Positions 1 to 34,571 of a stretch of DNA of 64,000 nt are shown piece by piece (within the stretch, counting starts at the first letter, position 1; every line of letters begins with the position of its first letter). The position numbers and the translations under genes were made by a program. The notes beneath the pieces are model-generated. The model made no database searches and was not told the DNA's origin. It saw nothing but the letters and a program-made list of their open reading frames with translations. The stretch spans positions 1 through 64,000 of the IMG/VR virus record IMGVR_UViG_3300012988_000016. One strand, written 5' to 3'.

Positions 1-1197
1 CAATACTTTCAGAAACGCAACGCCCTTTATGGGGATGATCATTCGATCAATCCTTCCCAGAAGCTGTTTCGAACCCGCCTCATGAATAGATTGAGGACTT
101 TGGACCCCGAGAAAGCTACCAAAGTTCAGCAACTATTAGGGCCATTGGAGCACAAGGAGTACAAGGCACTCCATAAGCGCTGGTCTTCTCAATACAGTGC
201 TTGGGCTAATCGTAAGACCAAGCATGAAGAGGCCCTGCAGGCCTACATGAAGAATCCTCAAGGTAAACCTCCAGGAGGATTCGTTGAGGAAGCCCCACCA
301 GAGCCAGAAAAACCAGTCACAGGTTCTCCAGAAGAGGGCCCCGATAAGGCCTCAGATATTTGGGACGATGCTTTTTCCCAGAATCAACATGAGGATGCCA
401 GTCACGAAGCTGTCAAACAGGCTAGTGTTTTTACTTATTCTAGAACCCATGTGATGGGATCTACCAGCAAAACGAGTGTCTATCATGGTGTCGACCCGTA
501 CGCCTATGGGGCACCAGACTATCCAGGTTGGATGCAGCCGCACCAAAGAGACTTGGGAGAGTCTGATTGGACAACCATCTTGGCTGAGGCCCGTCAATTC
601 TTAGGGTCCAGCTTGTTGGATGTGGCCGACCCGGGGGTTGACCCAGATGCTCAATTGAGAGCAGCTCTGGATCTGGCCATCTACTCAAGTCGTTACAACG
701 GTGCAGTGAATGCCACCCAATATGCCAATCTTTTGGCCAAGTTGGCGGGCAAGCCGCAACCCAGCACGACCCAAACCCTTTTGACCGTAACTGAGAAGAG
801 CGGGTCCTCGGACAGCACTTCTTCTTTTAACAACACATTGAGTGCCACCATTGGAGAAGTGACCCCCATGAAATCATCACGCACCGTTCGTGAATTCGCA
901 GCTAAGGTTGCAAAGTTTGATGCCAAGACCGCGTTTGAGATGACCGACTTCGCGGATCGTTTGGCGGAGCAAGAGCAACAAGACAAGGAACAGGAGCAGA
1001 AAACTGCTGGTGAGCTGCCCCCTTGGCTGAAGAAGGACGACGACAAGGAAGAGAAGAAAGACGACAAAGAGGAGAAGAAGGAAGCTGCCAAGTACGCCTC
1101 ACTCAAGGCTCTTGTGATCAAGACTGCTTCTGAGACTCCGGCCGCCGCTCGCGCCGCTTTCCGGCCACTACTCCAGGCTCTCAAGAACCTGGGCTGA
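1..1197 (+). CDS. Head-associated low-complexity protein, 5'-partial
   Basis: The frame of the ATG at 82 is open back to base 1 (QYFQKRNALYGDD...), so the gene starts upstream of the window. Charged/Pro-rich; KQAS, KTAG, KEAA and KTAS motifs; lies upstream of the head genes. Confidence 0.75.
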   Translation, partial: QYFQKRNALYGDDHSINPSQKLFRTRLMNRLRTLDPEKATKVQQLLGPLEHKEYKALHKRWSSQYSAWANRKTKHEEALQAYMKNPQGKPPGGFVEEAPPEPEKPVTGSPEEGPDKASDIWDDAFSQNQHEDASHEAVKQASVFTYSRTHVMGSTSKTSVYHGVDPYAYGAPDYPGWMQPHQRDLGESDWTTILAEARQFLGSSLLDVADPGVDPDAQLRAALDLAIYSSRYNGAVNATQYANLLAKLAGKPQPSTTQTLLTVTEKSGSSDSTSSFNNTLSATIGEVTPMKSSRTVREFAAKVAKFDAKTAFEMTDFADRLAEQEQQDKEQEQKTAGELPPWLKKDDDKEEKKDDKEEKKEAAKYASLKALVIKTASETPAAARAAFRPLLQALKNLG

Positions 1198-1233
1198 ACC
1201 CTTTTTACCTAGAAGGACTTAGGAACCCCACAA

Positions 1234-1629
1234 ATGGCTAACAAACTTTCTGCAGAACAGTCAAAAAAGGCAAGCGAGATTCTCTCTGCTTTCGATCGCA
1301 TCGCTTCCGACATTCAAGCGAACTTCGCCTCTATGGGGTTGTCGTTCGACAATGCCAAGCAACTTGTCAACCACCTCGATAAGGTGGCGGATGAGGCAGA
1401 GGCTCACTTCTTCGGTCCAGAATCGATGGCTCGCCGTCAGGTGGTGGTCCTAAAGAGTGCCAAGGTGATTCAAAAGGATTCGGACGAATCTTACATGGAC
1501 ACCTTCAACAAGCCTATGGCGCCGCTCCAGACGGATGCTGATGAACCGTACATGAGTGCTTACGCCGACGATCAGTCGAGTGCCGTCAATAACGGTAAGT
1601 CGACAACGGGCCGTCCTCTCGCTCCCTGA
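1234..1629 (+). CDS. Hypothetical head-associated protein
   Basis: RBS-like TAGGA upstream; internal DSDESYM/DADEPYM repeat; head cluster position. Confidence 0.75.
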   Translation: MANKLSAEQSKKASEILSAFDRIASDIQANFASMGLSFDNAKQLVNHLDKVADEAEAHFFGPESMARRQVVVLKSAKVIQKDSDESYMDTFNKPMAPLQTDADEPYMSAYADDQSSAVNNGKSTTGRPLAP

Positions 1630-1655
1630 ACTAAGTTTTAGTAAGGGACGGGCAA

Positions 1656-2366
1656 GTGATCGATTACTGGAAATTGACCAAGGACTTCAAGCCTGGGGAC
1701 TTCGTACAGAAGTACATCCCCAGTCGAAGTGTCAGTCTATCGCCCTATGTGGGTCGCGTCACAGCGGTCCTACATGGGATCGGTTTTCTTGATGTCCAGT
1801 GGCCTTTTGACAATGAACGAGTCTCGCCTGAAGAGGTGGTGAAGGTCAACAAGGAATTCGCCGCCTACCTACCACCTAGTCTCAATTTCTCCTACTACCC
1901 TGGTTTGGAGCAAAAGAGAGAGGCTTCGAAGGGTCAATGGCGTTCAATCGAGCTGCCGGCTGGCTTCCATAAAGAGCTAGCTAGACTGTTCCACAAGGGT
2001 GCTCATGAGGTAAGGGCATATGACGAACTGTGGCATCGTTACGCCTCTTTCTCTGATGATACGGCTTTGAGGGACGAGGTGCAGAGATTTTATCGCTTTG
2101 CCTCCAACTCGGTAGACCTGTTCATCAGTGAGTTCGTCCGTAAGACGGCCACCTACTGGGCGGCTCAGAATCGTACCCACAGGGCCACCAGGGCTGAGGT
2201 TGATAACCGATGTCCCAATTGTCCTAGGTGCGGGACAGCGATGCGGAAAACCACCTATAAGATGTCTGAGGGACAGCGAACACGCTTGTTTGCTTGTCCC
2301 AAAGATTTGTACCTGATCAAGCAGGATGACATTCTTGGTCCAGGTGGGGAGCCTGTTGCATGGTGA
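1656..2366 (+). CDS. Hypothetical protein: N-terminal KOW/SH3-like region and C-terminal zinc ribbon
   Basis: FKPGDFV...GRVTAV...LDVQW at the N-terminus; CPRC...CPKD near the C-terminus; GTG start. Confidence 0.7.
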   Translation: MIDYWKLTKDFKPGDFVQKYIPSRSVSLSPYVGRVTAVLHGIGFLDVQWPFDNERVSPEEVVKVNKEFAAYLPPSLNFSYYPGLEQKREASKGQWRSIELPAGFHKELARLFHKGAHEVRAYDELWHRYASFSDDTALRDEVQRFYRFASNSVDLFISEFVRKTATYWAAQNRTHRATRAEVDNRCPNCPRCGTAMRKTTYKMSEGQRTRLFACPKDLYLIKQDDILGPGGEPVAW

Positions 2367-2746
2367 GATCAGCCAACATTCCAGGCACTGTCAAGAATTT
2401 CTTGACCATCCTAGTGGGCCGTCTCACTCGCTATGACAAACTTCTTCAGCAGAACGCCCTAAAGAAGGGTCGTCCAGACAACATCTATCGTCTTTCTCTT
2501 TGGCTGGGTGCCAAACAGGAAGCTGAGCAGTTGGTTCATTCCTATTTGAACGAATCAACTCCTGAGGCGCTAAATGCATTGAAGGCGGCCCTCATTAAGA
2601 AATTCCACGTGAACGATATGCCGCCTGTCAAGGCGGTAATCAAGATGATTGATGAGTTCATTGCGAGCGGTAAATCCCCCAAGTATGCCTCTGCCAATCG
2701 CCTTGTTGATCGATTCCTAGGTTTGCCTCTTTTCGAGGTGTTCTAA
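2360..2746 (+). CDS. Hypothetical alpha-helical protein
   Basis: Overlaps the upstream stop (coupled); ends KYASANRLVDRFLG. Confidence 0.7.
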   Translation: MVRSANIPGTVKNFLTILVGRLTRYDKLLQQNALKKGRPDNIYRLSLWLGAKQEAEQLVHSYLNESTPEALNALKAALIKKFHVNDMPPVKAVIKMIDEFIASGKSPKYASANRLVDRFLGLPLFEVF

Positions 2747-2749
2747 GTC

Positions 2750-4297
2750 ATGGCCTTCTCCAAGTACGCCAATGCGGCAGTGGTTCAGCCCGTCGTAACG
2801 ATGTCGACATGGGACGATTTGCGTGCCAAGTCGATGGGCGGAGCTTTTGCCAAGACAGCCAGCTTGGAAGTGGTCCAGAAATACGACCCCAAAGAATATC
2901 TGCTTACACACTGTACCATCATCGCGTCTGTCGATACCGAGAACGGTCCTGGTCAGTTGGGACGTACGTTTGATAACGGTTTCCAGATCGATCGTCGTTA
3001 TCAAGACTACTACATCACTACCAAGACGGCACAGTATGTCAACAGCAATCAGGATAGCTGGGAACGTAACTTGTTGCTCGCAACGTTCCGCACCTTCATT
3101 GGTGGTCAGAATTACGTAGAACATTTGCAAATACCTGAGTTGTCTAAGGGACGCATCATTGATGCGGCGGCTCGTGATCTTGGAGACACGGTCTACGTAG
3201 ACATCTTGGTAGCAACGGAACTCAAGCATTCCCCTCTGATTGCGGCCATCAAGTCTCAGCAACTACAGACTCTAAGTATGGGTTGCACGGTCGCCCACAC
3301 AACCTGCACACAATGTGGGAATGTGGCGGAAGACGAGACCCAGCTCTGTCAACACATCAAATACTCCAAGGGCAATCAGTTCATTGATGCTCTGGGGAGG
3401 ACTCGTAAGATTGCCGAGCTGTGCGGCCATGTGACAGATCCTCGCTCGGTCAAGTTTATTGAGGCCAGTTGGGTCGCCAATCCTGCTTTCAAGGGGGCGG
3501 TGGTTCGCAACATCCTAACTCCAGATGAATTGGCCAAGGTTGGTAACAAGGTGCAAGTCGCCTTCTCGATGCCCACTCAGGTTCCGGACGCTTCTCAATT
3601 CGGAAAAGCGGCTCATCTGCAGACCAACGATATGAGGGTTGTGAGTCGTGTTCAGAACCCTGCCATTGCTCCTCGTACTAGGATTTCTCTATCGGATCCT
3701 TCGCATCCATCACAGGATCAAGAACAATTTGAAGGGGCTGATCAAGCGGCTCCGGCCAACCCTAAGAAAGATCAGCAACCCATAGATAAGGCAGTCGATA
3801 GCCTGGCTGATCTGATCAAAGAGAAGGCGTTGGAGAAGGTTCGAGGTGAGATGAATCAAAAAGATCTCCCCCCTCGTGCCGATTTGAAAGAAAATCAGAA
3901 CAACACTTTGCTGCGTGAAGCGGTCCAAAAGAGCTCCTCTTGGAAGCGTCTAGCAGAGGTGGTGTTGGCCCAAACACCCAATCCAGAGATGGCTCGCAAG
4001 GTCTTGACTGGCTTGTTGTTGTTCAAGAATGGCGGTTGGCAAGCCGTCAAAGAAGCTTCGTACTCAGGAACGGAAGTACTGGCAATCTCACGCTTTCTGG
4101 ACAACATCCAGGGAGTTAGGATTGCAGGCGAACATCGAATCTACCGCACCGTTTTGACTGTTGGCGGGATGTTGGCTTACGGAGATGCAGATAGCTACTT
4201 GGCGGCTTGTCGTCGAGCAGTTGGACGAGAACTGACCACATCAGAGACCGATGCCTTGATCACAAAAGGCAAACTTTTCGATCTCTCGAAATCGTAA
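2750..4297 (+). CDS. Prohead (capsid maturation) serine protease with Cys-rich insertion
   Basis: YVEH (His), LSMG (Ser) and FIEASWVANPAF match HK97/herpes-type prohead protease motifs; CTQC...CQH...CGH insert; upstream of scaffold and capsid genes. Confidence 0.8.
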   Translation: MAFSKYANAAVVQPVVTMSTWDDLRAKSMGGAFAKTASLEVVQKYDPKEYLLTHCTIIASVDTENGPGQLGRTFDNGFQIDRRYQDYYITTKTAQYVNSNQDSWERNLLLATFRTFIGGQNYVEHLQIPELSKGRIIDAAARDLGDTVYVDILVATELKHSPLIAAIKSQQLQTLSMGCTVAHTTCTQCGNVAEDETQLCQHIKYSKGNQFIDALGRTRKIAELCGHVTDPRSVKFIEASWVANPAFKGAVVRNILTPDELAKVGNKVQVAFSMPTQVPDASQFGKAAHLQTNDMRVVSRVQNPAIAPRTRISLSDPSHPSQDQEQFEGADQAAPANPKKDQQPIDKAVDSLADLIKEKALEKVRGEMNQKDLPPRADLKENQNNTLLREAVQKSSSWKRLAEVVLAQTPNPEMARKVLTGLLLFKNGGWQAVKEASYSGTEVLAISRFLDNIQGVRIAGEHRIYRTVLTVGGMLAYGDADSYLAACRRAVGRELTTSETDALITKGKLFDLSKS

Positions 4298-4343
4298 ATC
4301 TCTTTATACCCCACTACAAGGCATAGGAAAGGGTGATCCCGTC

Positions 4344-5570
4344 ATGCGCGAACGCACCACCTGGAATCGTGAAAAGATTGCACAGAACGTCAGAATTGCA
4401 GAAGACCCCCGTGCAATGAACCAAGACCATTTGAGCCAACAACCGGCAGCCGACAAGTATGAGATCGGTGGACCTTCGGATTTCGCCGAAGATGTTCATC
4501 CATCCAACACTACTTGGAAAGCTGAGTACAGCGGTGGTGAAGTCAAGCGCAACGAGATCGGAATGCCCGAACTACGTGGTGACACTTTCAACCATGCTGA
4601 GAAGACAGCTGCTGAACAGCAAGAAGAAGCTGCTGCGGAAGATGAGGTGCTGGAGAAGAAGGCCTCTCTCTGCATCAAGCTGGCCAAGCGCTGCCTGTCC
4701 AAGAAGGCTTCTGAGTCGATGATTGAAGATCAAGCTCTCGCATTCATGCATATGCCTGATGCAGCTTTGATCGAATCTGTCAATCGTCTGGCAGCCGAAG
4801 AGGAAGACGAAGAAGAGCAGAGCAAACAAGCTCAGCAACAGCAAGCTCAAGACTCGGAAGAGCAGAAGCAAGCTGGTCAGATTCCTGAGAACTTCAAGAA
4901 GAAGGATGAGAAGGAAGAGGGCCAGGAGCAGCAGGCTAAGCAAGCCCAGCAGCAAGCTCAGCAGGCTGACGAAGAGCAGCAAAAGCAGGCTCAGCAGCAG
5001 GCTAAGGATGATGCGGAAGAGCAGAAGAAGCAAGCTGCCTACCAGGCTTTCAAGGCCGCTTGTGATGCGATGGCCCAGACGGGCTTGCAGCAGGATCAGG
5101 TTATGTCGTTGTTCCAGCAAGCTCTGGGTCAAGGACAGCAGCAACAGGCTCCCGCTCAGGTTCAGCAGCAGTTGGGTGATGACCAATTGCTGGACCAGAT
5201 GCTCCAAGACGAGGTTGGTCAGCCAGTGTTGGCCAATAGCTTCAATGACATTGAGTTGGACGGTATCTCGATGGATGTTGGTGAGACTCACATCGCCGCT
5301 TCCGAGGATGAGGTTCTCAAGACCTTGTTTGCTTCCAATCAAGAAGTCATCGAAGCACAGCAAGCAAACGCAATCCTGACTGGTATTCCGGTTCAGGCTT
5401 CGACTGTGCACACAACCCGTACGGCCTCTAAGCGTACGATTGGCACTCAGCCCTCAGTTGGTGTGTCGGCAATCGGTAGCGGTGGAAACGCTGCTACGGG
5501 CGGAGATATCGACAAGTTGTCGAGCCTCTGGCAGTCGGCTCCAGACGTGAAGGGCATCTTCGGCATCTGA
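4344..5570 (+). CDS. Capsid scaffolding protein
   Basis: Acidic, Gln/Ala-rich, helical; between protease and decoration/capsid genes; many KQA repeats. Confidence 0.7.
   Translation: MRERTTWNREKIAQNVRIAEDPRAMNQDHLSQQPAADKYEIGGPSDFAEDVHPSNTTWKAEYSGGEVKRNEIGMPELRGDTFNHAEKTAAEQQEEAAAEDEVLEKKASLCIKLAKRCLSKKASESMIEDQALAFMHMPDAALIESVNRLAAEEEDEEEQSKQAQQQQAQDSEEQKQAGQIPENFKKKDEKEEGQEQQAKQAQQQAQQADEEQQKQAQQQAKDDAEEQKKQAAYQAFKAACDAMAQTGLQQDQVMSLFQQALGQGQQQQAPAQVQQQLGDDQLLDQMLQDEVGQPVLANSFNDIELDGISMDVGETHIAASEDEVLKTLFASNQEVIEAQQANAILTGIPVQASTVHTTRTASKRTIGTQPSVGVSAIGSGGNAATGGDIDKLSSLWQSAPDVKGIFGI
4820..5040 (+). repeat. Imperfect Gln-rich (E/D)EEQxKQAQQQA repeats in the scaffold gene
   Basis: EQSKQAQQQQAQDSEEQKQAG...QAKQAQQQAQQADEEQQKQAQQQAKDDAEEQKKQAA. 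Confidence 0.8.
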
Positions 5571-5651
5571 ATTGCTGAAGACCTAATACTCAATATCTAG
5601 ATGTAAATTTCGTCCCCCAGCAACAAAGCCCATTTTTAGGAGAATTTCAAT

Positions 5652-6269
5652 ATGCCTCTATCTCTCGGCCAAGGCTCGGGTGACTTCAGGGAAACTTCCG
5701 GCAGAGTGCAGATCTTCCACGTCGGTCAACGCAACAGCGTTGGCGTCTTGACGGCGGACGCTTTCACTCAAGCCAACCCCGTGAACGTCACTGCCGGTGC
5801 CAACAAAAGCACAACCCTCGCAGGTATCAGCAAACTAGGCGTCTTGGGCGCCAGCTTCGCATTCACTCGTCCAGACGCTGGTAACGGCTTTCACGGTGGT
5901 CCTGCCCAGGTAGGCGCAGCCTACGTGGTTGGCCAGAAGCCACTCGGCCTCTTCATCAACGATTCGTTGGGTAACGCCTTCGAAAACACCCCTGGTGTTG
6001 CCTCTGGTCGTGGCCCATACCTCTGCGGCTTCGGTACAGTCGGCGTTTCGCTCTGGGAAACCCAGAACCTAGCTTCAGGTAGCGCGGCTCTGACCTACGC
6101 TCCTGGCGATGCCCTCTATGCTTCGGCAAACGGGTTCATCACCAACGTGGCGGCTGACGCCTATGAAAAGTTCGGTGCCCTCAGCGCCAACACACCCACC
6201 ATCGTCGGCATCCTCAAGGTAGCCCCCGATGCGAACAACACGCTCTTGGTATTCGATCTCCGCATCTGA
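5652..6269 (+). CDS. Head decoration/cement protein
   Basis: Small Gly/Ala beta-rich protein directly before the capsid gene; YAPGDALYASANGFIT...VGILK resembles beta-tulip decoration proteins; strong AGGAG RBS. Confidence 0.65.
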   Translation: MPLSLGQGSGDFRETSGRVQIFHVGQRNSVGVLTADAFTQANPVNVTAGANKSTTLAGISKLGVLGASFAFTRPDAGNGFHGGPAQVGAAYVVGQKPLGLFINDSLGNAFENTPGVASGRGPYLCGFGTVGVSLWETQNLASGSAALTYAPGDALYASANGFITNVAADAYEKFGALSANTPTIVGILKVAPDANNTLLVFDLRI

Positions 6270-6316
6270 GCGGGAAACTAGGCCTCTAAGGGAATTCCCG
6301 TAAGGAAAACAAAGCT

Positions 6317-7198
6317 ATGCCTCAGCAAGTAAGCAACGAAGTCAAGCAGCAGATCATCTCCGAGTACATCAAGACCGCCGCCGGTCGTGCCAAGCTCGCA
6401 GCCTCGATGATCCAACCCTTGCGTCTCCGCCGTGACTACACGGCCGTTGGTCGCAAGACCTTCTTGGTAGAACAACTACCGGACGGCGCATTGCCAATCT
6501 ACGACAAGGATCCGGAAGTTACGGCTTTCGTGGTCGGCGAAGAAGGCTCGAACATCTTGGCTATCCAGAAGCCACGTCGTGTCATCTTCCCGTTGTTCGA
6601 GATCGCCTCGAACCCCGAAATACCGTTGACCCAGATCAAGGAGCGTCGTTTCGACCTCATTGAACGCAGCCAGGACCTCGCCAAGGCGCAGATTCAGGCC
6701 GCTGAAGATGAGCGCGTGTTCGCCGTCCTCGACAGCATCGCTGTCTCGGGCTTCGACACCCTCCCCGGCCAGACCAACCCGGATATCGCCGTGGTGGCCC
6801 CGATCTCGCCAAGCGTCCTCGCCGATGCTTTCGCGGAAATCGAACGCCACGACCTCCGTGTTGCTCGTATCTACATGAACGCCACCGACTACGCGGACAT
6901 CCGCAAGTTCGGTCGCGACATCCTGGATATCGAGTCGCAGGCCACCCTGCTCAAGACAGGTTTGCAGGCCACCCTCTGGGGTGCTCAGATCATCACGTCG
7001 CGTCTGGTTCCGGCCGGCTTCGTGTACGTCTGCGGCGAGCCAGAGAACTTCGGTCGCTTCCCCGTCCGCACGGAACTGACCGTGTTGTCGGCGGATGACC
7101 CGAAGGCCCGCACAATTGGTTTCAGCTGTTTTCAGAACGTCGGCATAGGCGCATTCAACCCGCGTGCTATGACCCGTTTGGTCGTCACCCGCATCTGA
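6317..7198 (+). CDS. Major capsid protein (HK97 fold)
   Basis: 293 aa; FEIASNPEIPLTQIKERRFDLIERSQDLAKAQIQAAEDERVF, IYMNATDYADI and LWGAQII match capsid motifs; strong codon bias; AAGGA RBS; terminator follows. Confidence 0.88.
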   Translation: MPQQVSNEVKQQIISEYIKTAAGRAKLAASMIQPLRLRRDYTAVGRKTFLVEQLPDGALPIYDKDPEVTAFVVGEEGSNILAIQKPRRVIFPLFEIASNPEIPLTQIKERRFDLIERSQDLAKAQIQAAEDERVFAVLDSIAVSGFDTLPGQTNPDIAVVAPISPSVLADAFAEIERHDLRVARIYMNATDYADIRKFGRDILDIESQATLLKTGLQATLWGAQIITSRLVPAGFVYVCGEPENFGRFPVRTELTVLSADDPKARTIGFSCFQNVGIGAFNPRAMTRLVVTRI

Positions 7199-7224
7199 AC
7201 CCAATAAGCCTAACGGCTTGATCG

Positions 7225-7262
7225 AAAACGCCTCCAGGGTTATCTCTGGGGGCGTTTTTCTT
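7225..7262 (+). terminator. Intrinsic terminator after the capsid gene
   Basis: AAAACGCCTCCAGGG-TTAT-CTCTGGGGGCGTTTT stem-loop followed by a T-rich tract. Confidence 0.85.
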
Positions 7263-7299
7263 TGGAGCTTAAGTCACCGTTATGCTACGATGTGAGATC

Positions 7300-9412: not shown

Positions 9413-9429
9413 AGCCTTACCCAGATATC

Positions 9430-10032: not shown

Positions 10033-10085
10033 ATAGCCGCCGTAATTGGCCTATATGGCCATCCGATGACGGTGTACAGCACCGT

Positions 10086-10421
10086 ATGCCTGACGATCTC
10101 GTCGCCAAATCAGCTGAAGAACTGTTACAAATAAAGCTAACACTGGAATCCGACATCGATTCCATCCGAGCTCAAATTGACGCCGCTCAGGCGAAGGCGA
10201 GAGAGACGGGTGAGTTCGCCGATTCGGACTGGTGGGGTAGGGCCAAGTGGGCACTGAAGAGCAAGGGTCGCCAATGTCAGCAGATCCAGCTGCTGTTGCG
10301 ACAGAAGAACAAGGCCGCTCAAGGGAGTCTGGAGAACTGCTTCATGACCACAGCTCGTGAGCTGTTGCCAGCCGAGCAGTTCCAGGCCATCCTGGATACC
10401 GCTAGGTTGAAGGTAGGGTGA
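10086..10421 (+). CDS. Hypothetical protein
   Basis: Helical; DSDWWGRAKWAL motif; tightly linked to ung. Confidence 0.7.
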   Translation: MPDDLVAKSAEELLQIKLTLESDIDSIRAQIDAAQAKARETGEFADSDWWGRAKWALKSKGRQCQQIQLLLRQKNKAAQGSLENCFMTTARELLPAEQFQAILDTARLKVG

Positions 10422-10424
10422 GGA

Positions 10425-11075
10425 TTGGATTCTTCTTGGAAGCAACGCCTGTCGGGTGAATTCACCAAGCCATACTTCAAGGAGTTGGTTGAGTTCGTTG
10501 CCATTGAGCGGAAGCGTGGTCCTGTTTTTCCTCCCCCACAAGATACGTTCAATTGTTTCAAGCTGCCCTTCGATGATGTCAAAGTGGTGATCTTGGGGCA
10601 AGATCCGTACCATGGGGCAGGTCAGGCCCATGGGCTTAGTTTCTCGGTTCAACCAGGCACCCAACTACCTCCTAGCTTGCGCAATATTTTCAAGGAGCTG
10701 GTGGAAGACCTAGAGATCCAGAAACCAAAGACCGGTTGGTTGGAGCCATGGTGTCGCCAAGGAGTTCTGTTGCTTAACACCACTTTGACGGTCCGAGCTC
10801 ATCAGGCGGGTTCACATCAGGGGCAGGGCTGGGAACAGTTCACTGATGAGGTGATTCGAACCCTCAGCTCCAGAGAGAAACCGGTCATCTTCGTCCTTTG
10901 GGGCCGTCATGCGAGGGCCAAGAAGGACCTGATTGACTCCAGGCATACCATCATCGAGTCGGCCCACCCTTCCCCTATGTCGGCCTCTAGCGGGTTCTTT
11001 GGATCCAAGCCTTTTTCGAAAGTGAATGCGGCCCTTCAGCAGATCGGGGAGGCTCCTATCGACTGGGCTATTTGA
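10425..11075 (+). CDS. ung: Uracil-DNA glycosylase, family 1
   Basis: GQDPYH, HGLSFS, PPSLRNI, GVLLLN, FVLWG and HPSP motifs all present. Confidence 0.97.
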   Translation: MDSSWKQRLSGEFTKPYFKELVEFVAIERKRGPVFPPPQDTFNCFKLPFDDVKVVILGQDPYHGAGQAHGLSFSVQPGTQLPPSLRNIFKELVEDLEIQKPKTGWLEPWCRQGVLLLNTTLTVRAHQAGSHQGQGWEQFTDEVIRTLSSREKPVIFVLWGRHARAKKDLIDSRHTIIESAHPSPMSASSGFFGSKPFSKVNAALQQIGEAPIDWAI

Positions 11076-11135
11076 CCGACTGGCCTATCTTTTTCAACCT
11101 CCTTAATCCTTTATGATTTGAGCCGTTATAGGAAC

Positions 11136-11783
11136 ATGGCTGAAATCAACGCGACAGAAAAGTCTCCGAAAGAAGCCTCTGCCAAAGGCGTGGCAGCTAG
11201 GTTTAAGGCGGCAGCCAACTTCACGATGCCTAGGTCGATCTACCTACCTGCAGAGGTGAGGGATCAAGCTCCGCTCACCCCAGAGGGCACGGATTTGGCG
11301 ATCTGGCAGTGGGAAGGTCAAGGCAAGTTCTACGCGATTGCGTTTGCGGCCAAGCAGAACAAGCCTCTTTGGAACTACTCTTTCAAGAGCGACGCCAATC
11401 GTCAACGTCAGATCGATGAAACGGTCAAATCTCGTAAGCTGAGCTTGGAATTCAAGCAGAAGCGTGTGGATGACCGTAAGAACCACGTTCACGGCTTTGT
11501 GGTGGGCGACATCCTGTATAGCACGTGGGGTTACGACCAAACGAACGTGAACTTCTTTCAGGTGGTCGAAGTCAAGGGTAAAGTGATCGTCACGAGGCCG
11601 ATTGGTTCAAAGGTCGTTCGTGAGTCCCAGGGAGCTAGCTATGTTGTTGCTGTGCCAAACAGCTTCCATGGTCCCGCGGAACGTTCGATTCCTGGCCCCA
11701 ATGGGACTAAGATCGACGGTCATCATGCCAGCAAATGGGATGGCAAAGAGAAGTATGAGACGTCTTCTGGTTGGGGGCACTGA
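11136..11783 (+). CDS. Hypothetical protein with a GDILYSTWGYDQTN motif
   Basis: Probable start ATG 11136 after a TAGGA RBS; N-terminal KEASAKGVAARFKAAA leader. Confidence 0.7.
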   Translation: MAEINATEKSPKEASAKGVAARFKAAANFTMPRSIYLPAEVRDQAPLTPEGTDLAIWQWEGQGKFYAIAFAAKQNKPLWNYSFKSDANRQRQIDETVKSRKLSLEFKQKRVDDRKNHVHGFVVGDILYSTWGYDQTNVNFFQVVEVKGKVIVTRPIGSKVVRESQGASYVVAVPNSFHGPAERSIPGPNGTKIDGHHASKWDGKEKYETSSGWGH

Positions 11784-11789
11784 GGCCTT

Positions 11790-11963
11790 GTGATCTCGCC
11801 CCGTTCCGTTGTAGCCCGCTTCAAAGAGGCCGTGATCCGCAAAGAAAAGGGTCAATACTGCGTGCGCTCGCCTGACAACGGTTCTTGGAGCGGCGGTTGC
11901 TACGATTCGAAGGGTGAAGCCGAGAAGCGCTTGGAACAAGTCGAATGGTTCAAGCATAAGTGA
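11790..11963 (+). CDS. Small protein (57 aa) missed by the ORF track
   Basis: GTG start after GAGG; MISPRSVVARFKEAVIRKEKGQYCVRSPDNGSWSGGCYDSKGEAEKRLEQVEWFKHK; fills the gap between neighbouring genes. Confidence 0.75.
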   Translation: MISPRSVVARFKEAVIRKEKGQYCVRSPDNGSWSGGCYDSKGEAEKRLEQVEWFKHK

Positions 11964-12002
11964 TGATTTGATTTCCTGCCCGCAATCTACTAGCATTGGT
12001 AG

Positions 12003-12221
12003 ATGCGTCAGCCTCAAATAAGCGATTCGGTACACTATCAGGCCTATGGGACTCCAGGGGGAGAATACCTGTCGGTCCCCCGAGCGGCCATCGTCACAGA
12101 AGTCTTGCCAGATGGGAAGGTGCGACTCTGTATCCTAAACCCAACCGGCATCTTCTTTAGCCCACCCTTGGACTACGATGAGGACGGTAAACCAGGTAGC
12201 TGGCGTTACCCTCCCGCCTGA
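12003..12221 (+). CDS. Small SH3-like hypothetical protein
   Basis: VHY...RAAIVTEV...VRLCILNPTG...GSWRYPP pattern. Confidence 0.7.
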   Translation: MRQPQISDSVHYQAYGTPGGEYLSVPRAAIVTEVLPDGKVRLCILNPTGIFFSPPLDYDEDGKPGSWRYPPA

Positions 12222-12288
12222 TTATCCATTTATCTACACTCTCCTTTAGAGGCCTGCTTCGTCTTTGGCTTCTGGGAGATGTATCTAA

Positions 12289-13449
12289 ATGAGTCAACCA
12301 ATCAAATTCACACCTGGCACTCCGATTCGCTTCATTGCAACCCGTACTTTCTCTGTGGGGTTGCCTAACAATCAGAGTTTCAACATCTCCAAAGGTATGG
12401 AGTTGGACTTCGATGGTACGAGCGTAACGCTGGACGGGTACCCTCCAGTGCCAGTCCCTAAGTTGCGCGGTACCATATCTATGGGTTGGATTGTCCCAGA
12501 AGCTGAATACGATCCGAACATCACGTTACAACCCATCTCGGCTGGGATCTCGATGCGGAATCCTGATGGTGGCAATCCGATGGATCCTCAAAAGCCCAGA
12601 ATAGCGGTCACGACTGTAGACGCTGAGGAACGAGAGGTTCGCAACGTCCAGGCTCACGCTCAAAAGACTCGACAACTCAATACCGCACCTCGTGGGCAAC
12701 GTCACGCCAGTGCGGCTGACTCACAAGAAGGGATTCCGGTTCGGACACTTTCTTCAGCTACTGTCCACAGAACCAATCTTGATGATGCTGGGGCGGCCAT
12801 TCGAGAGGCTGAGAAGATCAAGGTCCAGCCAGGCGTGGGCCGTACCCGTGAAGATCTGGCCAATAGTTTGCCAGAGGGTGAGCGAGAAGCTTATTTGGCT
12901 GAAGTTGAGGCATTTCGATCAGCTAGGGAGGTTGAAGAGGACCCTAGGGCATTGCGGGAGCGTGCCGCCAATCAGGCGATCCTGGAACGTCGAGTGGTCG
13001 GACGGGCTCCGGCTTTGAAAAATCAGGACAAGGACGGCTTCAACATCACCAATACGGTGGGGAATGGGATTGAGACTTTCGACCTGGGAGGTACCGGTGG
13101 AGCTGGTGCCGATCATGTCGAAGTGGTTGAGATTGATGGTATCAAGATCACCAATACCAATGGTCCACGCAAAAAGGTAGCTGCCAAACAGACGGCCCCA
13201 GCCCCCACCAGGGTAGTGGCGACCGTAAATCCTCCAGCTACAGACTCTAGGCGTCGCATCGCTAAGTCGATTTGCCCAGACTTTCCGGATAATTACAACT
13301 TTGACGACGCTCCTCGTAAGAAAGTTGCCCGTCTACAGGCCGATTATGAGGATCGTCCGGACGTGATTCGGGCAGTAGCAGCGGCCGAGACAGATCTAGA
13401 GGTCCGTAATCGGTTGGTTGAGGAGTTCCCAGAGGCGTTCGTCGGATAA
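12289..13449 (+). CDS. Hypothetical protein
   Basis: 386-aa ORF with a GGAGA RBS; no recognisable family. Confidence 0.75.
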   Translation: MSQPIKFTPGTPIRFIATRTFSVGLPNNQSFNISKGMELDFDGTSVTLDGYPPVPVPKLRGTISMGWIVPEAEYDPNITLQPISAGISMRNPDGGNPMDPQKPRIAVTTVDAEEREVRNVQAHAQKTRQLNTAPRGQRHASAADSQEGIPVRTLSSATVHRTNLDDAGAAIREAEKIKVQPGVGRTREDLANSLPEGEREAYLAEVEAFRSAREVEEDPRALRERAANQAILERRVVGRAPALKNQDKDGFNITNTVGNGIETFDLGGTGGAGADHVEVVEIDGIKITNTNGPRKKVAAKQTAPAPTRVVATVNPPATDSRRRIAKSICPDFPDNYNFDDAPRKKVARLQADYEDRPDVIRAVAAAETDLEVRNRLVEEFPEAFVG

Positions 13450-13472
13450 CCCGAATTTCCCTAGTCTTCTTG

Positions 13473-13508
13473 TGCACGCCCTTTAGGCGAATCCTAAAAG
13501 GGCGTGTA
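13473..13508 (+). promoter_or_regulatory. Hairpin sequestering the RBS and start codon
   Basis: TGCACGCCCTTTAGG-CGAAT-CCTAAAAGGGCGTGTA: 15 bp with one bulge, ending on the A of ATG 13508. Confidence 0.6.
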
Positions 13509-15004
13509 TGACTGATCCTACTGACAGGTGCCTCAATCGAGGTCATTCAAAAACAGCGTCCCCTATTCTCTATCTTCAAGAGGAGCTTGGGGACGCTCGT
13601 TTGCGTTGCGATCAGTTGGTTCGATACGTGGATGAGGCTGTGAAACTGGTCGAACGGTCCGATCAAAAGGATCATCTGTTCGAGGTGGCGGGCCATCTGA
13701 TCAGGGGGATCCCTGAGTCGGCATTCAAACTACAGAAGGCTTTGCAGGCTGTAGCATTGGCGGCGGATCGTATCGATTACGAAGAACTCAAGCAAGAGTT
13801 ACGCCCTGAAAAGGTAGAAGAGTTAGAACGGGTCCTACAAGAGGTTAGGATTCGGACCGTCCCACATCGTTCGTTTCCAACCCAGGATATTGCTATGCAC
13901 CCCAAACAAGCCGCTCAACAGCTCCGAGAATTCGTCCGTATTGCCCGTGAAGAAGGTCAAATACCTGTACACGAGGTTGCCGCTTTCTTGACCAAACTTG
14001 ACCCGCCAGGCGTCACCGCCTCTCAAGAGATAACGGCAGCTGATAAGTTGGAGAAGCTGGCTGAGATGTTGGAAGATCCCAACCAAGAGCCGTTGAGCAG
14101 GGTTCGTTTGGCGGCGGTGGTTCGTCGGGTAGCGATGGAAGCTACGGTTGATGATGCGGTACGCTTGGCGGCCCAACAGCCGGATGAGGAAGGGCAGTCC
14201 AAGACAGCTCTTCAACTCTCCCCATCTATTCCTGCCTTGTTTGAAGGTATCAAGGACAAGGCCATGAGGGCCATGAGGGCTGCTAATTCGGAGCATTGGC
14301 GCCCCGCTTTCATGCAACTCTTCTTCATCGTTGACGACATTGGGACACTCTTGGTTCAGATGGGTGGCTTGGACACCACCAAATCGGAAGCTCTCAAACG
14401 AGAGATTCGTCAGGCGCTCCCCACCATTAGTCATGGAAAAGGGGACCCCGCTGAAATGGCTCACATGGCCTCAGAAGGGCTTGCTTGGGACGTGGAAGCC
14501 ACCGAGGAGAAGCGGACCAAGTTTGAGGAAGGCAAGCCAGCTGACCCTACTGAAAACATGGACAAGGACGATGCTGCCAAGTGGAAAGACAACACTGACC
14601 AGTATGGTGACAAGTTCAAGGCAGCCCGTTTCCAAGAAGGGGAGTCGGCCGACCCTACTCAGAACATGAGTCCGGAGGATGCCAAAGAGTGGGAAGAACA
14701 GAACGAACAGAACAAGGACAACTTCAAGCAAGCGGGTGGAGTTGAAGACTCGTTCGTTCGGCGTCTCAAGAAGCACGAAAAAGAGATCGGTATGGGGAGC
14801 TTGTCGGCTTTGATGCAGAAGAGTGGTTGGCAAGAATCTGTAAGAGAGATGGCCAGCAAGTTGTTTCAGATCGAAGGTAAACTGCCCAAAGAACAGGCGG
14901 ATCGGAAGGCCAAAGATTGGGTCAAGCCGTCTATGTTTCAAGCCATCAAGGACGGGCTGACTGCAAAGACGGCCTCTGTCGATGATCTGATCTGGAAGGC
15001 CTGA
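13508..15004 (+). CDS. Modular head-associated hypothetical protein
   Basis: Helical segments separated by KTA/RLAA/KAA/KQA; contains a 36-aa tandem repeat. Confidence 0.75.
   Translation: MTDPTDRCLNRGHSKTASPILYLQEELGDARLRCDQLVRYVDEAVKLVERSDQKDHLFEVAGHLIRGIPESAFKLQKALQAVALAADRIDYEELKQELRPEKVEELERVLQEVRIRTVPHRSFPTQDIAMHPKQAAQQLREFVRIAREEGQIPVHEVAAFLTKLDPPGVTASQEITAADKLEKLAEMLEDPNQEPLSRVRLAAVVRRVAMEATVDDAVRLAAQQPDEEGQSKTALQLSPSIPALFEGIKDKAMRAMRAANSEHWRPAFMQLFFIVDDIGTLLVQMGGLDTTKSEALKREIRQALPTISHGKGDPAEMAHMASEGLAWDVEATEEKRTKFEEGKPADPTENMDKDDAAKWKDNTDQYGDKFKAARFQEGESADPTQNMSPEDAKEWEEQNEQNKDNFKQAGGVEDSFVRRLKKHEKEIGMGSLSALMQKSGWQESVREMASKLFQIEGKLPKEQADRKAKDWVKPSMFQAIKDGLTAKTASVDDLIWKA
14519..14734 (+). 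repeat. Two copies of a 36-aa tandem repeat
   Basis: KFEEGKPADPTENMDKDDAAKWKDNTDQYGDKFKAA / RFQEGESADPTQNMSPEDAKEWEEQNEQNKDNFKQA. Confidence 0.9.
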
Positions 15005-15007
15005 TTG

Positions 15008-15304
15008 ATGTCTAACAAATACTCCTACGACCTCACTGCGGCGGCCCCTTCTTTCGACAAGCTCTCAAAGGCCATGAAGGAAAGCGTCGATAGCTTGATT
15101 GAGACACGAGTCAAGATCCGGAAAGTTCATCAGATGCTGTCTGATGTGGGCAACGATGCTTCTGGTGTGTCGTACACCGATAATTACGATGACCCAGATG
15201 TACGTCGCGTACAGAAGATACTGTATGAGATGGATCACGAGATAGGCACAGCCTTCAATGCTGTTGAGAGTTTGGAACGAAATCTGAAAAAGAAGGCCAA
15301 ATAA
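15008..15304 (+). CDS. Hypothetical coiled-coil protein
   Basis: Packed between neighbouring genes; heptad-like composition. Confidence 0.7.
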   Translation: MSNKYSYDLTAAAPSFDKLSKAMKESVDSLIETRVKIRKVHQMLSDVGNDASGVSYTDNYDDPDVRRVQKILYEMDHEIGTAFNAVESLERNLKKKAK

Positions 15305-15306
15305 CG

Positions 15307-16164
15307 TTGGCCCAACCCCTTGTGTCTCGTCCGCCTTACGGCGAAACTCTTGCAGTAGCTGAGCTGCCAGGAGGCGAACCTGCGCAAAAGGGGATCTCCC
15401 TTGACCCTGGGATCCCTGGCTCGTCAACATTTTCAAAACCTGTAGATGACATTCGTAAGCCTGAGAATAAAGACGAGTCCATCTATCGGGTAGAAAGTCC
15501 TGACGATCTGACCAAAGACCAAACTAATCCCGATCAGATCGATCATTCTCAAGCAAAACCTAGTTATAATGGGTTAGGAAAACCGGAGCCTAGAGATACT
15601 AGTCCTTACCCTTACCGAGATGGTATCCCAAACACCCACAACGCTAGTTTTATCGCTGAGCTGTGGAAATTGGGGTCAGCCCACTCCAAAACACTGAAAC
15701 CTGCCAATGGGGTCAAGCTTGCGGCTGTGCCAGAGCAAATCCTTGAGGGCTTGGACTCACAGTTCAAGCAGCGAGCCACCAGCTGCTCCACCACCCTCAA
15801 AAGGGCTGATCTGGGCAATCTCAGATGGATCTTCGCAGTTGACTGTGGGAACGGCCCTAAGGCGGTCAAAATCAAGGCGTCTCGACCTGGCAATGTGATT
15901 GCCTTCGGGAAACTGGATCTTGAGATGTCGTGTTCGTGTCCAGCTTGGCAATGGTTGGGACCAGAGTTCCACGCCAAGCAGGAAGGGTATCAGCTAGGTC
16001 CCTTGGTGGGCACTGCCTCTACCCCGGACATCAAAGATCCTGAACGGGACAACCGAGTCTGCAAACACGTGGCATCGGTCCTCAGCTTCACCAAGAGCTG
16101 GGAAATCCCCAAAGCTAAAGCTCAGAGGGCGGTCAAGAAAGCCCTCAAAACCCAGAAAGAATGA
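15307..16164 (+). CDS. SWIM zinc-finger protein with a long disordered N-terminus
   Basis: MSCSCPAW...RVCKHV (CxC...CxH). Confidence 0.7.
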   Translation: MAQPLVSRPPYGETLAVAELPGGEPAQKGISLDPGIPGSSTFSKPVDDIRKPENKDESIYRVESPDDLTKDQTNPDQIDHSQAKPSYNGLGKPEPRDTSPYPYRDGIPNTHNASFIAELWKLGSAHSKTLKPANGVKLAAVPEQILEGLDSQFKQRATSCSTTLKRADLGNLRWIFAVDCGNGPKAVKIKASRPGNVIAFGKLDLEMSCSCPAWQWLGPEFHAKQEGYQLGPLVGTASTPDIKDPERDNRVCKHVASVLSFTKSWEIPKAKAQRAVKKALKTQKE

Positions 16165-34551: not shown

Positions 34552-34571
34552 AAAAACCAAAGGTAAAACAC

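What the first reader, a model, noticed from the sequence alone, without database searches (positions are those of the whole stretch)
1..16164. [K/R]-x-A motifs at domain boundaries suggest a head-protein processing code and polyproteins
Seen: K/R-x-A-(S/A/G) recurs at segment boundaries in head-region proteins. Examples: protease FAKTA|SLE; scaffold (many KQA, KTAA, KKAS); capsid IKTA|AG; 1656 (KREA|S and RKTA|T separate the SH3-like, helical and Zn-ribbon parts); 13508 (SKTA, RLAA, KAA, KQA, KTA); 15307 VKLAA|VPE; Dps VKMA|GGG. Known: large-phage prohead proteases (T4 gp21, phiKZ gp175) cleave many internal proteins at short consensus sites ending in Glu. Inference: here the protease cuts after Ala in K-x-A, turning several genes into polyproteins. 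K-x-A is low-complexity, so the enrichment must be tested.
Basis: inference. Interest (0 to 1): 0.7.

Follow-up and report, generated by a model that had tools for sequence, protein, structure and literature searches.

The report
Predicted Lys-x-Ala cleavage code of head proteins
The head-assembly genes of this huge phage and its relatives are specifically enriched in conserved Lys/Arg-x-Ala motifs that most likely mark where a T4-gp21-like prohead protease cuts, a specificity different from the Glu-ending sites known for other giant phages, but no cleavage has been shown.

Summary
In the head module (1-16164), [KR]-x-A-[SAG] occurs 36 times against about 15.5 expected (z 5.5). K-T-A occurs 11 times against 1.8 (z 7). 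This holds under local shuffles and without the scaffold. Other spacings, the reversed motif and [SAG]-x-E are not enriched, nor are the remaining 48 kb.

An unbiased scan of all 400 a-x-b pairs ranks K-x-A first or second in the head modules of four diverged relatives: the window, LR745208, Tunturiibacter phage Tunturi_5 and Bacillus phage G. It is unremarkable outside those modules.

In ortholog alignments, several sites are conserved islands in variable linkers. The clearest lies just after the protease catalytic domain: K/R 93% and A 90% across 69 representatives, with flanks under 20%.

The protease (2750-4297) models confidently as a T4 gp21 / herpesvirus-assemblin fold (Z 11.2 to 5JBL).

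My best reading, at about 0.6: it is a gp21-fold prohead protease whose P3-x-P1 specificity is [KR]-x-A, with a small P1' residue. It trims the capsid protein, scaffold, itself and internal proteins.

"Polyproteins" is only partly supported. The 13508 family carries 1-4 copies of a 42-residue module, nearly all ending in F-K-x-A.

No direct cleavage evidence exists.

The parts
1..1197 (+). C-terminal 398 aa of a 944-aa post-portal head protein. It is truncated by the contig end; the full gene is L004:2047-4881, with the portal at L004:176-2008. Candidate sites: K139-A141 (nt 415-423), K334-A336 followed by G-E-L-P-P (nt 1000-1008), K374-A376 (nt 1120-1128).
   Evidence: L004 is 99.95% identical and extends 3.7 kb upstream. 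(site conservation 0.54-0.58 against a local background of 0.16-0.40). (shared module). (third most enriched ORF of 454).
1656..2366 (+). 236-aa head-module protein of unknown function with five [KR]-x-A-[SHT] sites between residues 88 and 165. The best conserved are K114-A116 (nt 1995-2003) and K163-A165 (nt 2142-2150).
   Evidence: both sites kept in 0.81 of 32 orthologs. (family-wide observed/expected 4.25; 97% of orthologs are enriched).
2750..4297 (+). Prohead protease, 515 aa. The gp21/assemblin-fold catalytic domain is residues 1-246 (nt 2750-3487). Invariant H125 (nt 3122-3124) and S176 (nt 3275-3277) are the inferred catalytic pair, with a Cys-rich insertion (C186, C189, C200). Disordered linkers are 294-342 and 371-383. 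The helical C-terminal domain is 392-515 (nt 3923-4294).
   Evidence: phrog_18299, head maturation protease, E 6.8e-11. (AlphaFold2 model, mean pLDDT 82.9). (T4 gp21 5JBL Z 11.2, 144 residues aligned; herpesvirus proteases Z 5-7). (invariant columns).
3605..3613 (+). Protease K286-A287-A288. This is the strongest candidate self-cleavage site, at the end of the catalytic region just before the disordered linker.
   Evidence: K/R 93% and A 90% in 69 representatives that are at most 50% identical to each other, with flanking columns at 0-19%; motif kept 1.00 against a local background of 0.15; pLDDT drops below 50 from residue 294.
2852..2860 (+). Protease K35-T36-A37 followed by S. This candidate site lies in a lower-confidence loop inside the N-terminal part of the fold. 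[KR]-x-A is kept in all 28 aligned proteases, including Tunturi_5 and phage G. In the wider family only A-[SA] is conserved.
   Evidence: alignment A1. (A 78%, S/A 78%, P3 variable). (pLDDT 61 for residues 31-40).
3914..3922 (+). Protease R389-E390-A391. This candidate site is at the entry to the C-terminal helical domain, within the conserved N-x-x-[LIV]-[IV]-[KRH]-x-[ASG] motif.
   Evidence: K/R/H 81%, A/S/G 86%..
4344..5570 (+). Scaffolding protein, 408 aa, with 14 [KR]-x-A motifs. Conserved sites: K87 (nt 4602-4610), K105 (4656-4664), K120 (4701-4709), K175 followed by G-Q-I-P (4866-4874), and R359 (5418-5426, kept in 100% of orthologs).
   Evidence: (observed/expected 5.8; all orthologs enriched). 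(most enriched ORF in the genome). (the K-x-A-G-x-[LIV]-P module occurs in 1-3 copies in orthologous scaffolds).
6317..7198 (+). HK97-fold major capsid protein, 293 aa. Candidate N-terminal processing sites are K19-T20-A21 followed by A (nt 6371-6379) and K26-L27-A28 followed by A (nt 6392-6400).
   Evidence: phrog_2522, PF05065. K-T-A-A in 38 of 44 orthologs, R-T-A-A in 4, K-S-A-A in Tunturi_5, and E-T-E-E in phage G.
13508..15004 (+). 498-aa head protein of unknown function. It has a candidate N-terminal propeptide site at K15-T16-A17 followed by S (nt 13550-13558). Two tandem 42-residue modules (residues about 337-409, nt 14516-14734) end in F-K-A-A and F-K-Q-A (nt 14726-14734).
   Evidence: sites 15 and 407 kept at 0.91 against local backgrounds of 0.45 and 0.22. 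(48 modules in 28 proteins; 45 end in F-K-x-A and 2 more in K-x-A shifted by one residue).
15715..15723 (+). ORF 15307-16164, K137-L138-A139 followed by A. A conserved island in a variable region.
   Evidence: [KR]-x-A kept 0.88 and A kept 1.00, against a local background of 0.25 (26 orthologs).
5652..6269 (+). Probable capsid decoration protein, in the position of phage G gp26. It is depleted in the motif, as expected for a protein added outside the shell.
   Evidence: synteny with phage G gp26/gp27. (observed/expected 0.25 over 42 orthologs).
34084..34092 (+). Ferritin/Dps-like protein (33904-34551), K61-M62-A63 followed by G-G-G, between a conserved about 60-residue N-terminal segment and the ferritin domain. 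A possible cleavable extension. It lies outside the finding's coordinates.
   Evidence: (PF00210, residues 72-197); each of three orthologs has a K-x-A in this linker, at shifted positions.

Best explanation
The gene at 2750-4297 encodes a prohead serine protease with the T4 gp21 / herpesvirus-assemblin fold. I propose that it recognises a three-residue P3-x-P1 motif, as its characterised relatives do. Here the motif is Lys/Arg at P3 and Ala at P1, with a preference for a small residue (S/A/G) at P1', and the cut falls after Ala. Inside the procapsid it would do the following. (1) Remove about 21-28 N-terminal residues from the capsid protein. (2) Chop the N-terminal two thirds of the scaffold into short peptides and detach its C-terminal tail. 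(3) Free its own catalytic domain from the linker and C-terminal helical domain. (4) Remove short N-terminal propeptides or repeated targeting-like modules from internal head proteins (the post-portal protein, 1656, 13508, 15307 and possibly the portal). Shown here: the enrichment, its restriction to head genes, its replication in relatives, positional conservation, the protease fold, and the modular repeats ending in K-x-A. Inferred: that the motif is a cleavage site, which bond is cut, which copies are used, and the catalytic pair H125/S176.
For: (1) The enrichment is specific to i,i+2 spacing, orientation and a small P1' residue. It survives local shuffles and removal of the scaffold. (2) K.A ranks 1-2 of 400 gapped pairs in the head modules of the window, LR745208, Tunturi_5 and phage G, and ranks 63-284 outside them. 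(3) [KR]xA is the commonest class among conserved islands in variable surroundings (8 of 78; odds ratio 5.5, p 3e-4). The protease 286-288 site is almost invariant across 69 representatives within hypervariable flanks, and it abuts a predicted disordered linker. (4) The protease fold gives Z 11.2 to T4 gp21, followed by herpesvirus proteases. Known gp21-type enzymes use P3-x-P1 motifs (AXE for SPN3US gp245, PMC10052503). From my own knowledge, assemblins cut Ala|Ser. (5) The set of enriched proteins matches the usual substrates of a prohead protease. Scaffold, post-portal protein and 13508 rank 1, 3 and 4 of 454 ORFs. The external decoration protein is depleted, at 0.25 of expectation. (6) In the 13508 family, 45 of 48 modules of 42 residues end in F-K-x-A. 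Scaffold and post-portal proteins share a K-x-A-G-x-[LIV]-P module. (7) There is no enrichment of [SAG]-x-E and no x-E class among conserved islands.
Against: There is no direct evidence of proteolysis. Capsid-protein residues 10-21, upstream of the proposed cut, are as conserved as the mature part, so they may not be a discarded propeptide. Phage G's capsid protein has E-T-E-E at the homologous position and no K-x-A at all. The 35-37 site lies within the gp21-like fold, and its P3 Lys is not conserved in the wider family. Many K-x-A copies are unconserved or sit in well-folded regions, so the motif alone over-predicts sites. The four lineages share ancestry, so the replication is not fully independent. 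A protease-plus-capsid-N-terminus complex prediction gave no answer.
Confidence: 0.6

Rival explanations
1. K-x-A is a short linear docking or assembly motif that is bound but not cut. It might be contacted by the capsid shell interior, the portal, the scaffold or the protease's C-terminal domain to recruit proteins into the procapsid.
For: The motif is embedded in longer conserved modules: K-x-A-G-x-[LIV]-P-P in the scaffold and post-portal protein, and the end of the 42-residue module in the 13508 family. The capsid-protein segment on both sides of K19-A21 is equally conserved.
Against: A three-residue motif with one free position is a weak binding determinant. The small-residue preference at the next position and the location at linker boundaries are typical of protease sites. 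The clearest conserved copy (protease 286-288) stands alone in hypervariable sequence with no surrounding module.
Confidence: 0.15
2. The enrichment is a structural or compositional by-product of Lys/Ala-rich helical, scaffold-like proteins and of inherited repeats, with no sequence-specific function.
For: The enriched proteins are Lys-, Ala-, Gln- and Glu-rich and largely helical. A.[KR] is mildly enriched too (z 2.4). Part of the count comes from internal repeats in the scaffold and 13508.
Against: Local shuffles preserve composition, and the excess remains (z 5.5). The helical spacings i+3 ([KR]..A) and i+1 are not enriched, and neither is the reversed motif. K-T-A, which is not a helix-favouring triplet, is the top tripeptide. 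Conserved islands occur in non-repetitive linkers.
Confidence: 0.1
3. The phage protease does process these proteins, but the true determinant or scissile bond is different. It might cut after the Lys/Arg, or recognise a longer or structural determinant of which K-x-A is only a correlate.
For: Sequence statistics cannot place the scissile bond. At protease site 35-37, the wider family conserves [QRK]-A-[SA] rather than K-x-A. In some portal orthologs P1 is Ser rather than Ala.
Against: Characterised gp21-type proteases cut directly after the third residue of a P3-x-P1 motif (PMC10052503). From my own knowledge, assemblins cut Ala|Ser. The small-residue preference falls after the Ala, not after the Lys.
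Confidence: 0.1
4. A host protease or a second phage protease is responsible for any cutting at these sites. One candidate is the HExxH protein at 8237-9403.
For: ORF 8237-9403 has an HExxH motif and weak Peptidase_Mx hits.
Against: That ORF is present in only 2 of the related loci, whereas the motif enrichment is family-wide. The enrichment tracks genes next to the conserved gp21-fold protease in phages that infect unrelated hosts: Acidobacteriota (Tunturi_5) and Bacillota (phage G).
Confidence: 0.03

Closest known systems
T4 gp21 prohead protease (PDB 5JBL) and its giant-phage relatives phiKZ gp175 / SPN3US gp245
   Same: The catalytic-domain fold is the same (Z 11.2, 144 of 164 residues aligned). 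The gene lies between the portal and the scaffold/capsid genes. Many head proteins appear to carry short three-residue P3-x-P1 motifs. Candidate self-processing sites flank the catalytic domain.
   Different: There is no detectable sequence similarity: no Pfam hit and no PDB sequence hit. The predicted P1 is Ala and P3 is Lys/Arg, instead of P1 Glu with P3 Leu/Ile (T4) or Ala/Ser/Gly (phiKZ, SPN3US; PMC10052503). This enzyme also has a Cys-rich insertion and a 225-residue linker plus helical C-terminal domain.
Herpesvirus assemblin (e.g. VZV 1VZV, PRV 4V08, HSV-1 8BQ1)
   Same: The fold is related (Z 6-7). From my own knowledge, assemblins cut Ala|Ser at a release site just after the protease domain and at a maturation site near the C-terminus of a fused scaffold-like region. 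Here a conserved [KR]-A-A-[SAR] follows the catalytic domain, and a further site precedes a C-terminal domain.
   Different: P3 is basic rather than hydrophobic. The structural match is weaker than to gp21. The scaffold is a separate gene. The catalytic triad was not mapped.
HK97 gp4-type capsid maturation proteases (Pfam PF04586, MEROPS S78)
   Same: The role and genomic position are the same, and the capsid protein is an HK97-fold protein.
   Different: No PF04586 match for any of the 28 family members scanned. The capsid protein has no delta domain. A separate scaffold gene is present.
T4 capsid-targeting sequences of internal proteins
   Same: Short N-terminal or modular segments end in the protease motif. 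Examples are the 17-residue N-terminus of 13508, the 42-residue modules, and the K-x-A-G-x-[LIV]-P module shared by the scaffold and post-portal protein.
   Different: A targeting function is purely inferred here. The modules are repeated internally, not only at the N-terminus.

Membership tests
gp21 / assemblin-fold prohead serine proteases (MEROPS clan SH) | Characteristic catalytic-domain fold | tested here: met
   The AlphaFold2 model has catalytic-domain pLDDT of about 95. VIA-align gives Z 11.2 to 5JBL over model residues 1-246, well above the next hits, which are herpesvirus proteases at Z 5-7. Foldseek's top three hits are also 5JBL.
gp21 / assemblin-fold prohead serine proteases (MEROPS clan SH) | Catalytic His and Ser (plus a third residue) in the order His...Ser | tested here: inconclusive
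   H125 and S176 are invariant in 87 sequences and lie 51 residues apart. Other invariant or near-invariant His and Ser residues exist (H54, S60, H160, H227, S240). No coordinates were available to map them onto the gp21 active site.
gp21 / assemblin-fold prohead serine proteases (MEROPS clan SH) | Encoded in the head module next to portal, scaffold and major capsid genes | tested here: met
   The gene order is portal (L004:176-2008), post-portal protein, small ORFs, protease, scaffold, decoration protein, capsid protein. The order is the same in Tunturi_5 and phage G.
T4/phiKZ-type specificity subgroup (cleavage after Glu) | Substrates carry [LI]-x-E or [SAG]-x-E sites | tested here: not met
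   [SAG].E is 80 observed against 80.4 expected in head proteins. No x-E class appears among the top enriched pairs or among conserved islands. This is indirect evidence, since actual cleavage was not assayed.
Herpesvirus assemblin-type processing | Cleavage between Ala and Ser at a release site after the protease domain and a maturation site further downstream | not testable with these tools
   The sequence pattern is compatible: [KR]-A-A-[S/A/R] at 286-289 and [KRH]-x-[ASG]-[SA] at 389-392. The scissile bond can only be established experimentally.
HK97 gp4-type protease (PF04586) | Match to the family profile | tested here: not met
   No Pfam hit for the window protease or any of 28 relatives at E up to 1.

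The most novel reading that the evidence does not exclude
A large, globally distributed lineage of huge phages shares a head-protein processing code. The protease family has more than 2,000 clusters at 50% identity. The lineage includes cultured phage G and Tunturi_5. In this reading, a gp21-fold protease has switched its P1 preference from Glu to Ala, as in herpesvirus assemblins, with a basic P3. Short repeated modules ending in K-x-A would act as cleavable capsid-targeting tags that load cargo into the head, possibly including a ferritin/Dps-like protein, much as encapsulins load their cargo.
Probability: 0.3. Interest if true: 0.75.

Novelty: new variant of a known kind. Interest (0 to 1): 0.55.

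Why it matters
If the motif is the cleavage code, the mature virion proteome of hundreds of uncultivated huge phages can be predicted from sequence. That covers propeptides, scaffold fragments and packaged internal proteins. It would also document a specificity switch within the gp21/assemblin protease fold that parallels the Ala|Ser specificity of herpesviruses, which bears on the shared ancestry of tailed-phage and herpesvirus assembly. The hypothesis can be tested directly in two cultured relatives, phage G and Tunturi_5. The repeated modules ending in K-x-A are candidate targeting tags for loading proteins into large capsids.

Tried and rejected
- **Phage G mass spectrometry paper:** Gonzalez et al. 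2020 (PMC7316594), which might list mature N-termini, is not held. Other phage G and jumbo-phage papers gave no cleavage sites. A literature search for a phage Ala-specific prohead protease found nothing relevant.
- **Sequence links to known proteases:** Sequence searches of the protease against Pfam and PDB found no known protease.
- **First structure model:** The model built from 23 sequences was poor (pLDDT 55.6) and was replaced by a model from 87 sequences.
- **Complex prediction:** Protease 1-293 with capsid protein 1-50 gave no answer, so it is evidence neither for nor against.
- **1656 domains:** A language-model atlas search gave only weak leads, so the SH3-like and Zn-ribbon claims were not verified.
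- **Myrna:** My simple ORF caller failed on high-GC mycobacteriophage Myrna. With the annotated genes, the two large proteins upstream of its capsid gene show a 2-2.7-fold excess, too few counts to conclude anything.
- **Truncated protease representatives:** Short representatives looked like fragments and were not used as evidence for a domain boundary.
- **Portal site:** The portal N-terminal K-M-A-S is only partly conserved, with [KR]-x-A in about half of 15 orthologs.
- **Rejected explanations:** Circular closure of the genome does not explain the open ORF at position 1; the contig is simply truncated. Recent gene transfer does not explain the near-identical capsid proteins, because synonymous sites are close to saturation.


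Full report
**What the window is.** The 64-kb window is the first part of a single 308,895-bp contig of a huge tailed phage.

- Its capsid protein (6317-7198) is an HK97-fold protein (phrog_2522, PF05065).
- The capsid protein is 83% identical to that of the uncultured 485-kb phage LR745208, 47% to Tunturiibacter phage Tunturi_5 (309 kb) and 38% to Bacillus/Lysinibacillus phage G gp27.
- 504 relatives were found in IMG/VR.
- The contig is truncated at its 5' end. IMG/VR contig 3300012985_000006 (locus L004) is 99.95% identical over window 1-17195 and continues 3.7 kb upstream.
- The open frame at 1-1197 is therefore the C-terminal 398 residues of a 944-residue protein (L004:2047-4881) that follows a 610-residue probable portal (L004:176-2008).
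- Head-module gene order: portal, post-portal protein, 1234-1629, 1656-2366, 2360-2746, protease 2750-4297 (phrog_18299), scaffold 4344-5570, probable decoration protein 5652-6269 (position of phage G gp26), capsid protein.
- A block of accessory genes follows: a LAGLIDADG endonuclease, an HExxH protein, a UDG-like protein and others, most with few orthologs in related loci.
- Conserved head genes then resume at 12289-13449, 13508-15004 and 15307-16164.

**Check of the observation.** The "Dps" example lies at 33904-34551, outside the stated range.

| Pattern, head ORFs (5,162 aa) | Observed | Expected | Source |
|---|---|---|---|
| [KR].A[SAG], whole-protein shuffles | 36 | 15.2 +/- 3.9 | |
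| [KR].A[SAG], 15-residue local shuffles | 36 | 15.8 (z 5.5) | |
| [KR].A[SAG], 30-residue local shuffles | 36 | 15.5 (z 5.6) | |
| [KR].A[SAG], scaffold excluded | 29 | about 14.5 (z 4.0) | |
| K.A[SAG] | 26 | 8.8 (z 6) | |
| KTA | 11 | 1.8 (z 7) | |

- The signal is specific. [KR]A, [KR]..A, the reversed [SAG]A.[KR] and the gp21/phiKZ-like [SAG].E are at expectation.
- None of the patterns is enriched in the other 15,361 residues of the window.
- KTA is the most enriched of all tripeptides in the head set.
- Genome-wide, 11 of 32 KTA lie in 5.3% of the proteome (binomial 4e-7).
- Ranking all 454 ORFs of the contig by their own excess of [KR].A[SAG] puts the scaffold first, the post-portal protein third and 13508 fourth.

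**Replication in relatives.** An unbiased scan of all 400 a-x-b pairs was run on four diverged head modules.

| Phage | Rank of K.A in head module | z |
|---|---|---|
| LR745208 | 1 | 4.5 |
| Tunturi_5 | 1 | 4.2 |
| This window | 2 | 4.0 |
| Phage G | 2 | 3.3 |

Outside the head modules of the same records, K.A ranks 63-284.

Observed/expected for [KR].A[SAG] across orthologs collected from 80 IMG/VR loci, whose proteins are typically 35-60% identical to the window's:

| Protein family | Observed/expected |
|---|---|
| Scaffold | 5.8 (every ortholog enriched) |
| 1656 family | 4.25 |
| 13508 family | 2.8 |
| Capsid protein | 2.5 |
| Post-portal protein | 1.7 |
| Decoration protein | 0.25 |
| Downstream control gene 16161 | 0.44 |

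**Positional conservation.** In the ortholog alignments, [KR]xA is the commonest residue-pair class among "islands". An island has both positions at least 80% conserved while the surrounding 20 residues are at most 50% conserved. [KR]xA accounts for 8 of 78 islands, which is 10.5% of all [KR]xA positions against 2.1% for other pairs (odds ratio 5.5, p 3e-4).

The clearest sites are listed below.

| Protein | Site | Motif kept | Local background |
|---|---|---|---|
| Protease | 286-288 | 1.00 | 0.15 |
| Scaffold | 87 | 0.8 | about 0.3-0.5 |
| Scaffold | 105 | 0.9 | about 0.3-0.5 |
| Scaffold | 120 | 0.8 | about 0.3-0.5 |
| Scaffold | 175 | 0.9 | about 0.3-0.5 |
| Scaffold | 359 | 1.0 | about 0.3-0.5 |
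| 13508 | 15 | 0.91 | 0.45 |
| 13508 | 407 | 0.91 | 0.22 |
| 15307 | 137 | 0.88 (Ala 1.00) | 0.25 |
| 1656 | 163 | 0.81 | 0.46 |

- In the capsid protein, residues 19-22 are K-T-A-A in 38 of 44 orthologs.
- A profile search of 1.84 billion representatives found 2,014 protease-family clusters.
- Among 69 full-length representatives that are at most 50% identical to each other, position 286 is K/R in 93% and position 288 is A in 90%. The flanking columns are 0-19% conserved and rich in indels.
- Pooled over conserved sites: P3 is K 70% / R 30%. P2 is T, L, A, S or V. P1' is A 30% / S 17%, with no strong preference elsewhere.

**The enzyme.**

- The protease has no Pfam or PDB sequence match.
- An AlphaFold2 model built on 87 sequences is confident: mean pLDDT 82.9, about 95 in the catalytic domain.
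- It aligns to T4 gp21 (5JBL) with Z 11.2 over residues 1-246. Herpesvirus proteases follow at Z 5-7.
- H125 and S176 are invariant and 51 residues apart, in the His-then-Ser order of this clan. Their catalytic role is inferred, not mapped.
- The model shows disordered linkers at 294-342 and 371-383, and a well-folded helical domain at 392-515.
- Candidate site 286-288 therefore sits at the exit of the catalytic region, and site 389-391 at the entry of the C-terminal domain.
- A third candidate, 35-37, is conserved as [KR]-x-A in all 28 close and distant proteases aligned, including Tunturi_5 and phage G. In the wider family it is conserved only as A-[SA].
- Site 35-37 also lies in a loop inside the gp21-like fold, so it is less convincing.

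**Modules.** Two kinds of short repeated module carry the motif.

- K-x-A-G-x-[LIV]-P-[PE]-x-[FL]-K occurs in the scaffold (1-3 tandem copies in orthologs) and near the C-terminus of the post-portal protein. It also occurs in the Tunturi_5 and LR745208 scaffolds.
- In the 13508 family, a 42-residue module (F-E-E-G-K-P-A-D-P-T ... W ... F-K-x-A) is present in 1-4 copies. 45 of 48 copies end in F-K-x-A, after which the sequences diverge.
- These are plausible cleavable targeting or docking modules.

**Interpretation.** Characterised gp21-type proteases recognise P3-x-P1 motifs and cut after P1, for example AXE for SPN3US gp245 (PMC10052503). From my own knowledge, herpesvirus assemblins of the same fold cut Ala|Ser at a release site behind the protease domain and at a maturation site downstream.

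Five features together fit a gp21-fold protease with [KR]-x-A specificity better than the alternatives:
- the i,i+2 spacing;
- the small residue after Ala;
- the substrate set (capsid N-terminus, scaffold, protease flanks, internal proteins);
- the depletion in the external decoration protein;
- the absence of any Glu-motif signal.

I put this at about 0.6.

The caveats are substantial:
- Nothing here shows proteolysis.
- The segment upstream of the capsid site is as conserved as the rest of the protein.
- Phage G's capsid protein has E-T-E-E at that position.
- Many copies of the motif are unconserved or buried.
- The lineages compared share ancestry.
- A complex prediction gave no answer.
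- The one paper likely to hold mature N-termini for phage G could not be read.

**Verdict.** The cleavage-code interpretation is the best-supported reading but unproven. The "polyprotein" claim is only partly supported. Relative to known systems, this is a new variant of a known kind: prohead-protease processing of giant-phage heads with a different, assemblin-like P1. Its practical value is that it can be tested directly in cultured relatives.

Noticed in passing
window 1-1197; L004:1-4881: The genome contig is truncated at its 5' end inside a gene. A 99.95% identical IMG/VR contig supplies the missing 546 N-terminal residues of this 944-aa Pro/Glu/Lys-rich post-portal protein, and the probable portal upstream of it. 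Joining the contig ends does not restore the frame.
   Followed up: yes
orthologs of window 2750-4297 (e.g. L005:5122-7959, P0004, P0014): About half of the 150 best protease-family representatives are 600-1,963 aa long because of one to several inteins (Hint plus LAGLIDADG domains). The inteins are inserted at conserved positions of the catalytic domain (profile positions about 101, 125, 181, 189, 202 and 228). The window's protease is intein-free.
   Followed up: partly
window 6317-7198 and 80 IMG/VR loci: The capsid protein is 93-96% identical at the protein level across phages with contigs of 140-530 kb. Neighbouring head proteins are only 35-60% identical, and fourfold-degenerate sites of the capsid gene are only 30-60% identical. 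This points to extreme purifying selection rather than recent transfer.
   Followed up: partly
window 7282-8229: A free-standing LAGLIDADG homing endonuclease with an HTH domain lies immediately downstream of the capsid gene. Homologues were found in 32 of the related loci.
   Followed up: no
window 8237-9403: This ORF has an HExxH zinc-metallopeptidase motif and weak Peptidase_Mx hits. It is present in only 2 related loci, so it is an accessory gene inside the head module.
   Followed up: no
window 10425-11075: This ORF (phrog_12143) carries a G-Q-D-P-Y-H motif typical of family-1 uracil-DNA glycosylases. It is embedded among the head genes.
   Followed up: no
window 33904-35600: A ferritin/Dps-like protein (PF00210) with a conserved 60-residue N-terminal extension is followed directly by a strong match to the actin-like Volactin family (PF25216, E 1.7e-73). 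The two genes are also adjacent in locus L087.
   Followed up: partly
window 46597-47370: This 257-aa protein of unknown function is the second most enriched ORF in the whole contig for [KR]-x-A-[SAG] (6 against 1.1 expected), although it lies outside the head module. It may be another substrate or assembly protein.
   Followed up: no
L084 (Mycobacterium phage Myrna gp96, gp97, gp99): This is a distant relative by capsid protein (28% identity). The two very large proteins upstream of its capsid gene have a 2-2.7-fold excess of [KR]-x-A-[SAG]. Its capsid protein has T-K-L-A-H just before the conserved N-terminal region. The motif may extend to cluster C mycobacteriophages.
   Followed up: partly
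window 19756-20439 and 41687-44878: An HNH / endonuclease VII-like gene and a UvrD-type helicase are interspersed with the structural genes.
   Followed up: no
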